Shown here: positions 55,998 through 58,900 of the stretch, one piece after another
Layout: each line of letters opens with the position of its first letter
Position numbering within the stretch: position 1 is the stretch's first letter
NCBI RefSeq assembly: GCF_040938485.1
Contig: NW_027271175.1
Span: forward strand, 1,302,001 to 1,366,000
Reading direction: 5' to 3'
Length of the DNA stretch: 64,000 nt
From: Diadema antillarum
Lineage: Eukaryota
Position numbers and translations under genes: made by a program
The notes under the pieces: generated by a model
What the model was told of the DNA's origin: nothing
The model's database searches: none
The model's input: only the letters and a program-made list of their open reading frames with translations

Positions 55998-58900
55998 ATG
56001 CAGCAAGCTGCCGCCAGGAGCCTCCTGGCCTTCAGGGGGCGCTGTATGGATGTCAACTTTGACATCGGTAACTCGAACTACAAGCCCCTGGAAAAAATTG
56101 GAACTGGTAAGAAAGGAAGGCTTAAAACTTAACAATGAGTTTTGCAGCTGGCACATTTTCTATTCCAGAAAAAAAAAAATGTCCATCATATAGTGTGATT
56201 TTTGGTGCTAATATAGGTCGAAATGTGTCCATCCATTCATTTTTGACTAATATAACAACTTAGTCCATATGATATAAACTTTAATGATTACTTTAGCAGC
56301 CCTTCAAATGTAGACTGTGTGTAAGGTTATAGATGCCTGAGAATGGAATTGTATTGCCTTTTGTGGCAGCTTCAGACTGGCTGTTTGTATTGTTCTGATG
56401 ATTTAAAAGCTAGCAAGTGTATTTTATCACAGAATATTTGCATTCTGTCAACTCTGTCTCCTTTATGGTAGGTGCCTATGGAGTTGTCTGTTCAGCTGTG
56501 AGCAAGAAGAACGGAGAAAAGGTTGCAATCAAAAAGATCCCAAATGCTTTCGATGAATTAACCACTGCCAAAAGGACATTCAGAGAGCTCAAAATCTTGC
56601 GTCACTTCAGGCATGAGAACATCATCGGAATACGTGAGATTTTGATGCCCAAGGAGCCACTGGCAGACATAAGGGATGTGTATGTTGTCTTTGATCTGAT
56701 GGAGAGTGACTTGCATCAGATCATCCATTCAAACCAACCATTCAGTCTGGAGCACATCAGATTCTTTCTCTACCAGATTTTGCGAGGACTGAAGTACATC
56801 CACTCAGCTGATGTCATCCACAGGGACTTGAAGCCGAGTAACCTGCTCGTCAATGAGAATTGTGAGCTCAAAGTCGGTGACTTTGGGATGGCAAGGGGAT
56901 TGTCGACAGTTGGTAAGGATAAAAAGCGTGTGTTTATGACTTCGTACGTGGCAACGAGGTGGTATCGTGCCCCGGAGCTCCTCTTCTCTTGTGACGATTA
57001 CACGCTAGCAGTAGACATCTGGTCAGTTGGGTGTATCCTGGGGGAGATGATTGGAAGGAAGCAGATGTTTCCAGGCAAGAATCCAGTCGACCAGCTCTCC
57101 CTGATAGTGGACACACTTGGCATGCCCCCAATCAACATGTTGACAGCGACGAAAAATGAGGGCAGCCAGAATCAGTTATACAATTTCATTCAGAGGAGCT
57201 TCGCAAACAAGACACCAAAGGATCTGAGCACAAGATATCCAAAGGCGGACCCACAGGCTGTTGATCTGCTGAAGAAAATGCTTGTATACGAACCTGCAAA
57301 ACGCATTACGGTCACAGAGGCATTGCAGCATCCATTCTTGGCAACTTACTACAGCCCTGATGATGAACCCATTTGCTTCCCCAAGTTTGACTTCTCCTTT
57401 GAGAACAATGACATGTCGAGGGAACAGATTCGGCAACAGGTTGGCAAGATGATTCTAAAATACAACAAGCCAAAAGGTTGGATTGGAAAAGGAGTTCTAA
57501 ACATTGTTCCAAAGAACACGCCTGATGCTTCCAAATCAGTGACTACCACCAACCACTCCCCTTTGCAGACAGTTAGTCCATCACCCAGGCAATCATCTCT
57601 TCAAACAATAGGACCAGCTACCAGGGGCACTTTACAGACAATTGGTCCCTCAGCTAACAAAGCCACACTGCAGACGGTCGGTCCATCAGTGAACAAAGGC
57701 ACCTTGCAGACAATTGGGCCCTCCAGCAAAGCTGGGTCTCTCAAAACAGTGGGCCCTTCATCAGAAAAAGCCATGCACTCAGTCCGTCCCACAGCTGATC
57801 CAAGCCAACAGGGGACCATCAGTGTTGTGCGGAAAGGCAGAGATGGTGAGAATGTGACAGTCTCATCAGGATCACCTCTGATCAGGGAAAGTCTACTCAG
57901 TGGACTGTCTGGCCCTTCTCTCTTCTTTGGTGCTACCAGTGACACTTCCCCCAAATTTGGTGCCAGTGATGATGTTCCAAGTCAAGGTGCCTTCAAACCG
58001 ATCTGTGATGACAAAGTCAAGGCAGAGACGGAGTCGTCCATGGCAAGTGGATTCCTCGGCCTGCCTGTAGTTGCCGGAGTGTCCGGTTCAGTGAGCGACG
58101 TGGAAATGCCTAGTGCCAAGTCAACCAGTGGAGACTCGATGGCATCATTTCTGTTGTCAGCAAGCAAGGGCAAACTTGCCAGTCCAGCAGCCTCTCTGCT
58201 GGTCACCAGTGATATTGAGATGTGGAGTGCCAAGGGGGAATCCCCATCCCTCGATGAGCAGCCAGCTATTACAGACATTGCCAAACCAACAGACAGGGAA
58301 GTGCAGCCTGCCACAGGGAACACAGGAGCTAGGTTTGTAAATGCAGATTACAGAATGCTTTGTCACATCAGAATTTTCTTTTTTCTTTATAAATACTTAA
58401 TGCCATGTTCATCTAGTACAGCCCAAGTGTTTATAAAGTATTGCTCCACAGCCAAATATTTTGATCTCTGATTTATTCTAATCAATAGTATTAAGTTTAT
58501 GACAACTTTTACATCACAGTAAGTTCAAACAAGAGCACTAGATAAAGTTTGATAATTCTTTAAATTTGTCACTTATGAATGATGAAACTACTGCATGTTA
58601 GAAAGCCCCACAACTTTCAGTTTTTCAGATTTGAAAAGGCCAATATGATACTGTACTAGCTGAAAATTTTTAGATTGTTTTATTTCAGCGAATTTCATGA
58701 ATCACTTTCGAACTGCTAAAAAAAATAGTTACAGACTAATCTAAAAACACACAAGAACAACATTGAATTTGTTTGGTGAAAATATATTTTCATTAGAAAA
58801 AAATTAAGCCATGTCAGTGTGCAACTAGTAACTGCTGTGGGTCTAGCATGCTGCGTTTACCGTGATGTAGCAATATCTGAGGCACAACAACAAGCTATTA

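What the first reader, a model, noticed from the sequence alone, without database searches (positions are those of the whole stretch)
56936..56950. ERK5 with a TSY instead of TEY activation loop
Seen: [19 protein letters not shown] (ACT TCG TAC, 56939-56947) in an otherwise intact ERK5. Glu to TCG needs at least two base changes, so a single-base error is unlikely. Known: ERK5 and ERK1/2 use TEY, p38 uses TGY and JNK uses TPY; MEK5 phosphorylates both T and Y. Inference: the middle residue loses its negative charge and becomes a third phosphorylatable site, which may alter MEK5 or phosphatase specificity or add an input. Anti-pTEpY antibodies could miss this kinase.
Basis: partly seen in the sequence, partly recalled or inferred. 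Interest (0 to 1): 0.7.

Follow-up and report, generated by a model that had tools for sequence, protein, structure and literature searches.

The report
Sea urchin ERK5 with T-S-Y loop
The T-S-Y activation loop in this sea urchin (Diadema antillarum) ERK5 kinase is real, but all four sea urchins sampled share it and every sampled non-chordate bilaterian ERK5 lacks the textbook glutamate, so it is a lineage trait rather than a one-off oddity.

Summary
CONFIRMED. Window 56939-56947 reads ACT TCG TAC (Thr193-Ser194-Tyr195). It lies in an intact, spliced, five-exon ERK5/MAPK7 gene whose product is 100% identical to the NCBI protein 'uncharacterized protein [Diadema antillarum]'. Contigs from two DNA runs of different studies show no difference at the codon, so it is not an error.

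It is not peculiar to this genome. T-S-Y occurs in all four sea urchin ERK5s found (Diadema, S. purpuratus, Lytechinus pictus, one unnamed).
- Starfish have T-V-Y, sea cucumbers T-Q-Y, and a crinoid T-N-Y.
- Hemichordates have T-A-Y or T-T-Y.
- Lophotrochozoans have T-Q-Y (8 of 9).
- Amphioxus, vertebrates and sponges keep T-E-Y.

So the Glu is ancestral and was lost outside chordates. Thr, Tyr and the following [10 protein letters not shown] never vary. All five echinoderm classes also carry a basic lip (K/R cluster, net +2 to +3) where other ERK5s range from -3 to +1.

A 2024 preprint already notes in one sentence that S. purpuratus ERK5 has a substituted middle residue.

Most likely this is a normally MEK5-activated, dually phosphorylated ERK5. 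Whether the Ser changes regulation is untested. A yeast Slt2 E191G study shows that the middle Glu can matter for catalytic output and Hsp90 binding. Modest interest.

The parts
56939..56947 (+). T-x-Y dual-phosphorylation motif: ACT TCG TAC = Thr193-Ser194-Tyr195
   Evidence: No difference in contigs of runs X1 and X2.
56900..56938 (+). Activation lip between DFGMARG and T-x-Y ([13 protein letters not shown]), net charge +3, with the K-D-K-K-R cluster at 56915-56929
   Evidence: All five echinoderm classes score +2 to +3; other ERK5s score -3 to +1.
56879..56887 (+). DFG motif (GAC TTT GGG)
56948..56977 (+). [10 protein letters not shown] (P+1 segment, including the arginines said from memory to bind pTyr), invariant in all 36 ERK5 rows
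55998..56106 (+). Coding exon 1 (MQQAAARS...EKIGTG), with donor GT at 56107
   Evidence: The N-terminus is identical to P0164 and similar to Asterias P0132.
56472..58332 (+). Coding exon 2: the rest of the kinase domain (Pfam Pkinase to about 57340) and the first part of the tail
   Evidence: The donor at 58333 is confirmed by the spliced contig of X10.
57563..57796 (+). Seven LQT(I/V)GP-type repeats just after the kinase domain
   Evidence: Seen in the translation and noted by earlier finding s1-208887.
59373..59485 (+). Coding exon 3 (SGDSSSS...[21 protein letters not shown])
   Evidence: X10 record 10 lies on 58260-58330 plus 59371-59485.
60703..61922 (+). Coding exon 4. It holds the basic [13 protein letters not shown]... 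stretch (60759-60830) and the ERK5-type C-terminal block EDPIP...[12 protein letters not shown] (about 61731-61895).
   Evidence: BLASTP to opossum MAPK7: 1038-1092 against 669-719, E 5e-10.
62750..62971 (+). Last coding exon ([18 protein letters not shown]...KDTK plus stop)
   Evidence: tblastn of the P0164 tail, 100% identity.

Best explanation
This is the single ERK5/MAPK7 orthologue of the sea urchin Diadema antillarum. It is most likely a conventional MAP kinase switched on by MEK5 through dual phosphorylation of Thr193 and Tyr195. The residue between them is a Ser fixed in the sea urchin lineage. It is one state of a position that lost its ancestral Glu outside chordates and then settled on a different small or polar residue in each ambulacrarian class. 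In echinoderms the same lip also gained a basic K/R cluster. Shown here: the sequence, its fixation in four sea urchins, the distribution across phyla, the invariant Thr, Tyr and flanks, and splicing of the transcript. Inferred: activation by MEK5 is retained and the Ser is compatible with activity. Whether the Ser is functionally neutral or re-tunes the kinase is open.
For: Gene identity:
- Pfam Pkinase scores 1.2e-64.
- The best solved relative is human MAPK7 (5o7i, 9e-127, 426 bits), against about 320 bits for ERK1/2.
- In an IQ-TREE tree the ERK5 clade has 96/99 support, echinoderms 100/99 and sea urchins 100/100.
- The ERK5-type C-terminal tail is conserved.
- The model is 100% identical to the NCBI Diadema antillarum protein.

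The codon is real: two DNA runs from different studies agree with the window, and a spliced contig shows expression.

Distribution of the middle residue:
- Sea urchins TSY (4 of 4), starfish TVY (5 named proteins plus unnamed P0007).
- Sea cucumbers TQY, crinoid TNY, an unnamed asteroid-sister clade TAY.
- Hemichordates TAY or TTY; lophotrochozoans TQY (8) and TLY (1).
- Amphioxus and all vertebrates TEY; 96 of 96 sponge ERK5-like proteins TEY.

Constraint:
- Thr, Tyr and [10 protein letters not shown] show 0 changes on the tree. The middle residue shows 8 changes, none within a class. The lip upstream shows 10-17 changes.
- The Ser codon differs synonymously between two sea urchins (TCG against TCA).

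Literature:
- Sea urchins have MEK5 (PMC4883820).
- MEK5-ERK5 specificity rests on PB1 and D-motif docking, and an MKK5(PB1-D)-MKK1 chimera activates ERK5 (PMC3605678).
- A TSY MAPK of T. brucei is found phosphorylated on its TXY motif (PMC2716717).
- TSY and TQY loops also occur in plant and fungal MAPKs (PMC4769017).
Against: There is no biochemical evidence for any echinoderm ERK5. Phosphorylation of Thr193 and Tyr195, and activation by MEK5, are inferred from conservation only. In the fungal counterpart Slt2, E191G left dual phosphorylation in place but nearly abolished catalytic output and Hsp90 binding (PMC9106771), so replacing the Glu is not automatically neutral. The within-class fixation together with the basic lip suggests selection rather than mere tolerance. 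Only four sea urchin sequences were available, and the RNA contigs do not cover the codon.
Confidence: 0.75

Rival explanations
1. Adaptive re-tuning. Loss of the Glu, together with the basic K/R lip in echinoderms, changes how ERK5 is handled. It could insulate the loop from MEK1/2 and from ERK-directed phosphatases, because the loop no longer matches the ERK1/2 loop. It could also change Hsp90/Cdc37 dependence and shift the balance between catalytic and non-catalytic (transcriptional) outputs. This overlaps with the best explanation rather than excluding it.
For: The residue is fixed within each class while the neighbouring lip residues vary. The lip charge is +2 to +3 in all five echinoderm classes, against -3 to +1 elsewhere. 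In vertebrates the ERK1/2 and ERK5 loops are identical around the target sites, and insulation then relies on docking alone (PMC3605678). Slt2 E191G loses Hsp90 binding and Rlm1 output but gains non-catalytic Swi4/6 output (PMC9106771). As cited in that paper, the TGY-to-TEY swap in p38 alters substrate affinity (Jiang et al. 1997).
Against: There are no functional data for any non-Glu ERK5. Eight different residues are accepted across clades, which fits relaxed constraint as well as it fits repeated adaptation. Gly in Slt2 is not Ser. A scan for columns that partition with the Glu found no lost charged partner, and those columns are confounded with phylogeny. Echinoderm MEK5 could not be examined.
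Confidence: 0.25
2. Ser194 is a third regulatory phosphorylation site inside the loop, adding an input.
For: Ser is phosphorylatable and is fixed in four sea urchins. Thr occupies the same place in two hemichordates.
Against: Sister classes carry Val, Ala, Gln or Asn at the same place, and none of these can be phosphorylated. The site is followed by Tyr, not Pro, so it is not a MAPK autophosphorylation consensus. The K/R cluster lies at -5 to -9 from the Ser, not at the -3 position that (from memory) basophilic kinases typically prefer. The T. brucei TSY report describes the motif as a phosphorylated TXY motif and does not report phosphorylation of the Ser.
Confidence: 0.1
3. Sequencing or assembly error, or a decaying pseudogene copy of ERK5.
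For: None beyond the departure from TEY itself.
Against: Two DNA runs from different studies agree. The Ser is found in three other sea urchins. The gene has an open frame of 1174 codons across five exons with canonical splice sites and a spliced contig. The kinase region is 85% identical to that of Lytechinus.
Confidence: 0.01

Closest known systems
Vertebrate ERK5 / MAPK7 (BMK1), for example the human kinase domain in PDB 5o7i, 4b99 and 4ic7
   Same: It is the best solved-structure match (9e-127). [20 protein letters not shown] and T[12 protein letters not shown] are shared. The long C-terminal tail has a basic stretch, an EDPxP...GYG...DLEEF block and an SASLL.DWL end. It falls in the same clade in the tree.
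   Different: The middle residue is Ser, not Glu. The lip is basic (+3) rather than neutral to acidic. The tail is largely different in sequence and carries seven LQTxGP repeats.
Sea urchin ERK5 already in databases: S. purpuratus XP_011671761.1 (MAPK7) and the Lytechinus pictus homologue
   Same: The T-S-Y loop, the K/R-rich lip and the domain layout are the same. They form a 100/100 clade with the window protein. A preprint notes the substituted middle residue in S. purpuratus.
   Different: They are 62-65% identical over the full length. Diadema belongs to a different, early-branching euechinoid order (my own knowledge), which extends the trait in time.
Yeast Slt2/Mpk1, the fungal counterpart of ERK5
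   Same: It is a TXY MAPK with a long C-terminal extension, and the preprint treats it as the ERK5 orthologue. The paper states that heterologously expressed human ERK5 is activation-phosphorylated by yeast Mkk1/2 and can carry out the non-catalytic Swi4/6 activation. It is the only system found in which the middle Glu was mutated (PMC9106771).
   Different: Slt2 keeps TEY. The experimental change was to Gly, not Ser, and it was deleterious for catalytic output.
MAPKs with natural T-S-Y loops: T. brucei Tb927.6.1780 and some plant and fungal MAPKs
   Same: They have the same three-residue motif. The trypanosome kinase is found phosphorylated on its TXY motif. TSY is listed in plants and fungi.
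   Different: They are unrelated MAPK subfamilies and are not ERK5 orthologues. They show only that T-S-Y is compatible with a phosphorylated MAPK loop.

Membership tests
ERK5 / MAPK7 orthologous group | The kinase domain is closer to MAPK7 than to any other MAPK subfamily | tested here: met
   PDB search: human MAPK7 scores 426 bits, against about 351-371 bits for the next-best chains (Mitogen-activated protein kinase 4 and 6) and 320 bits for ERK1/2. In the tree the ERK5 clade has 96/99 support, with the window inside echinoderms at 100/99. The tree's outgroups were p38, plant and fungal MAPKs; no animal ERK1/2 was included.
ERK5 / MAPK7 orthologous group | A long C-terminal extension with ERK5-specific conserved blocks | tested here: met
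   The protein has 1174 aa. BLASTP of the tail to opossum MAPK7 gives E 5e-10, and there are matches to the crinoid and sea cucumber tails. The last exon ends with the SASLL.DWL-type block.
ERK5 / MAPK7 orthologous group | A T-x-Y dual-phosphorylation site with the DFGMARG lip start and [10 protein letters not shown] | tested here: met
   Thr193 and Tyr195 are present. The flanks are invariant in all 36 ERK5 rows.
ERK5 / MAPK7 orthologous group | Glu as the middle residue (T-E-Y), the textbook vertebrate signature | tested here: not met
   The residue is Ser (TCG). The same test fails for all 24 non-chordate bilaterian orthologues collected. The Glu therefore marks chordate and sponge ERK5 and does not define the orthologous group, so membership is kept on phylogeny and architecture.
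ERK5 / MAPK7 orthologous group | Activation by MEK5 through PB1 and D-motif docking | not testable with these tools
   MEK5 is reported in the sea urchin kinome (PMC4883820), but no echinoderm MEK5 sequence or assay was available here.
Conventional (MAP2K-activated) MAPKs | Catalytic Lys, HRD, DFG and APE, plus the arginines that bind pThr and pTyr (alpha-C R-x-x-R, HRD Arg, DFG+3 Arg, TRWYR) | tested here: met
   The alignment to human MAPK7 shows akrtfrelk, [10 protein letters not shown], gdfgmarg and [11 protein letters not shown] all conserved. The assignment of these arginines to phosphate binding comes from my knowledge of ERK2 structures.

The most novel reading that the evidence does not exclude
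ERK5 lost its loop Glu outside chordates. In echinoderms the whole activation lip was also rebuilt from acidic or neutral to basic. Together these changes would be a functional re-tuning of the MEK5-ERK5 module. Possible effects are loop-level insulation from MEK1/2 and ERK phosphatases, or a change in Hsp90 dependence and in the balance of catalytic and non-catalytic output, as in Slt2 E191G. The class-specific residues (S, V, A, Q, N, T) would then form a natural mutational series for the old question of what the TXY middle residue does.
Probability: 0.2. Interest if true: 0.6.

Novelty: new member of a known kind. Interest (0 to 1): 0.33.

Why it matters
'ERK5 = TEY' is repeated in reviews and built into phospho-specific antibodies. 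The data here show that this holds for chordates and sponges but for no sampled lophotrochozoan, hemichordate or echinoderm.

For sea urchin, starfish and mollusc work, reagents and motif-based annotation aimed at pT-E-pY may miss ERK5. This is an inference and was not tested.

For MAPK biochemistry, one orthologous group carrying eight natural middle residues, plus a charge-reversed lip in one phylum, is a ready-made test set. The question it addresses is how far the loop sequence, as opposed to docking, shapes activation, dephosphorylation and chaperone binding.

For this window the result is mostly deflationary. The feature is real but inherited, and it has been visible in public sea urchin proteins for years.

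Tried and rejected
1. Sequencing error. Rejected: contigs from two studies agree, and three other sea urchins have the same Ser.
2. Pseudogene. Rejected: the gene has five intact exons and a spliced contig.
3. A second TEY paralogue. Two word-index protein searches covering 336-1955 aa returned one ERK5 cluster per named echinoderm species (the Apostichopus cluster also held fragmentary models) and no echinoderm TEY ERK5. Only the best 120 hits are listed and the genome itself could not be searched, so this is absence of evidence.
4. Organism B (a congener). Its run X6 laid nothing on the kinase exon at 88% likeness or more, so it gave no information.
5. DNA for S. purpuratus and Lytechinus ERK5. 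No gene with exactly those products is on record, so their Ser codons are unknown.
6. A scan for residues that switch together with the Glu. A few columns partition perfectly (window residues 23 and 281; partly 207-208, 241, 254, 275 and 363). None is a lost basic partner, and all are confounded with the Ambulacraria plus Lophotrochozoa grouping. Not informative.
7. Literature on TQY or TSY in invertebrate ERK5. Nothing was found beyond one sentence in a preprint. Searches for ERK2 E184 mutants found only a cancer nonsense variant.
8. The scan's own notes held nothing on MEK5 or MAPK7 in this genome.
9. The exhaustive representative-protein search and structure prediction were not run.

Full report
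OBSERVATION

Window 56939-56947 reads ACT TCG TAC. In frame this gives ...[33 protein letters not shown]. The codon sits in a long exon that Pfam scores as a protein kinase domain (Pkinase, 1.2e-64).

I rebuilt the gene from splice signals and checked it against public data. There are five coding exons on the + strand: 55998-56106, 56472-58332, 59373-59485, 60703-61922 and 62750-62971. The translation is 100% identical over residues 1-1101, and over the last exon, to P0164. That protein is annotated at NCBI as 'uncharacterized protein [Diadema antillarum]', 1174 aa. The window is therefore from the long-spined sea urchin Diadema antillarum. The motif is Thr193-Ser194-Tyr195.

IS THE CODON REAL?

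Logan contigs of four runs were laid on 55950-61940.
- Run X1 may be the sample the assembly came from. It covers 55950-59793 in one contig.
- Run X2 has the same species label but comes from another study and sample. It covers 56013-57416.
- Neither run shows any difference at 56939-56947. The nearest differences are a synonymous A>C at 56578 (both runs) and T>C at 57307 (X2).
- Run X10 has a 203-nt contig that lies on 58260-58330 and then directly on 59371-59485. This removes exactly the GT..AG intron and ends at the exon 3 donor, so the gene is transcribed and spliced. No X10 contig covers the Ser codon.
- The congener's run X6 laid nothing on the kinase exon.

WHAT THE GENE IS

The closest solved structures are human MAPK7 kinase domains (5o7i and others, E 9e-127, 426 bits). 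ERK1/2 score about 320 bits. The alignment keeps the catalytic Lys (VAIKK), [15 protein letters not shown] and [11 protein letters not shown]. It also keeps the arginines that, from my knowledge of ERK2 structures, bind the two phosphates.

The tail carries ERK5-type blocks:
- a basic [13 protein letters not shown] stretch;
- an EDPIP...[12 protein letters not shown] block that matches opossum MAPK7 at E 5e-10;
- an [10 protein letters not shown] end.

I built a maximum-likelihood tree of 40 kinase regions (IQ-TREE, LG+C20). It recovers an ERK5 clade (96/99) whose internal order largely follows animal phylogeny:
- sea urchins 100/100;
- echinoderms 100/99;
- Ambulacraria 100/98;
- Lophotrochozoa 100/98;
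- vertebrates 100/99.

DISTRIBUTION OF THE MIDDLE RESIDUE

This is the main result. The first protein search could only see proteins up to 1069 aa. A second search with the 1117-aa Asterias protein brought in the long echinoderm proteins. Cluster look-ups supplied names.

The loops are as follows:
- Sea urchins, T-S-Y: Diadema, S. purpuratus XP_011671761.1, Lytechinus pictus, and an unnamed ENA contig.
- Starfish, T-V-Y: two Asterias species, Patiria, Acanthaster, and one unnamed.
- Sea cucumbers, T-Q-Y: Holothuria and Apostichopus.
- The crinoid Antedon, T-N-Y.
- Three unnamed proteins with T-A-Y (P0005, P0012, P0121); the two placed in the tree (P0005, P0121) branch beside starfish and are probably brittle stars (inference).
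- Hemichordates: T-A-Y in Glandiceps, T-T-Y in Ptychodera and Saccoglossus.
- Lophotrochozoans: T-Q-Y in eight (molluscs, an annelid, nemerteans, a brachiopod) and T-L-Y in one.
- Amphioxus and every vertebrate: T-E-Y.

A third search identified the basal T-E-Y group of the tree as sponges (Ephydatia; Corticium 'MAPK7-like'). All 96 such proteins have T-E-Y.

The Glu is thus the ancestral state. It is kept in sponges and chordates and lost in every sampled lophotrochozoan and ambulacrarian.

HOW CONSTRAINED IS THE SITE?

On the tree the middle residue changes 8 times. All changes fall between major clades and none within a class. Thr, Tyr and the next ten residues never change. The lip just upstream changes 10-17 times per column.

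The codons are:
- TCG in Diadema and TCA in the unnamed sea urchin;
- GTA in Asterias;
- CAG in Holothuria;
- GCG and GCT in the T-A-Y clade;
- AAT in Antedon;
- ACG in Ptychodera.

The two sea urchin Ser codons differ synonymously, so there has been time for change at the codon while the amino acid was kept. Ala (GCN) is one step from each of Ser, Val, Thr and Glu. This is inference.

A SECOND, PHYLUM-WIDE FEATURE

The 13-15 residues between DFGMARG and the Thr carry a K/R cluster in all five echinoderm classes, with net charge +2 to +3 (K-D-K-K-R in Diadema). Hemichordates score 0 to -1. Chordates, lophotrochozoans and sponges score -3 to +1. The Ser is therefore part of a broader remodelling of the activation lip in echinoderms, not an isolated substitution.

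MECHANISM

Shown: an intact, expressed ERK5 with invariant Thr and Tyr and an intact phosphate-binding framework.

Inferred: it is activated by MEK5 through dual phosphorylation. Four published findings support this.
- Sea urchins are reported to have MEK5 (PMC4883820).
- MEK5-ERK5 specificity rests on the PB1 domain and D-motif docking rather than on the loop, and an MKK5(PB1-D)-MKK1 chimera activates ERK5 (PMC3605678).
- As cited in PMC9106771, TGY-to-TEY swapping in p38 changes substrate affinity (Jiang et al. 1997). The title of that paper states that upstream kinase selection is unaffected.
- A T. brucei MAPK with T-S-Y is found phosphorylated on its TXY motif (PMC2716717).

Against simple neutrality there is the Slt2 result. 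In yeast Slt2, the fungal ERK5 counterpart, E191G left stress-induced dual phosphorylation in place. It nearly abolished catalytic output to Rlm1, abolished the stress reinforcement of Hsp90 binding, and raised non-catalytic Swi4/6 output (PMC9106771).

The re-tuning hypothesis therefore stays open, at about 0.2-0.25. It proposes loop-level insulation from MEK1/2 and ERK phosphatases, or a changed chaperone dependence.

The third-phospho-site idea is weaker, at about 0.1. Sister classes carry Val, Ala, Gln or Asn at the same position, and the local context matches no obvious kinase consensus.

PRIOR KNOWLEDGE

The S. purpuratus protein with T-S-Y has long been public. [quoted passage not shown]

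I found no paper describing the T-Q-Y state of lophotrochozoans, the class-specific residues of echinoderms or the basic lip. The library does not cover subscription journals.

VERDICT

The specific finding is another member of an already noticed sea urchin state. The wider pattern is a modestly interesting comparative result that is cheap to test. Interest 0.33.

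Noticed in passing
window 59750-60550 (intron 3 of ERK5): A very high-copy interspersed repeat. Summed contig depth is 14,000-72,000 in runs of both this species and its congener, against about 17 for the flanking single-copy DNA. Many contigs join about 59848 to about 60402, skipping roughly 550 bases, so most genomic copies appear to be a short form of the element. A 27-nt A/C-rich direct repeat sits near both ends (59824-59850 and 60423-60449).
   Followed up: partly
window 57563-57796: There are seven LQT(I/V)GP-type repeats directly after the kinase domain. 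They are absent from the starfish, sea cucumber and vertebrate tails that I looked at.
   Followed up: no
ERK5 gene tree: Ambulacrarian ERK5s group with lophotrochozoan ERK5s (98/93) rather than with chordate ERK5s. This grouping coincides with the loss of the loop Glu. It could be a rate artefact or a shared ancestral change.
   Followed up: no
window 56578 and 56168: There is a synonymous A>C polymorphism at 56578, in a Thr codon of the kinase domain, in both DNA runs. The intron 1 A-run is three bases longer after 56168 in both runs.
   Followed up: no
L002:7465-9111 (Asterias rubens ERK5 locus): A DDE-type transposase gene (DDE_Tnp_1, DDE_Tnp_4) lies inside an intron of the starfish ERK5 gene.
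   Followed up: no
Proteins P0092, P0215-P0304 (sponge ERK5-like): Most sponge ERK5-like predictions are only about 400-460 aa, whereas Corticium has 788 aa and Ephydatia 582 aa. Either many sponges lack the long ERK5 tail or these are single-exon gene calls.
   Followed up: no
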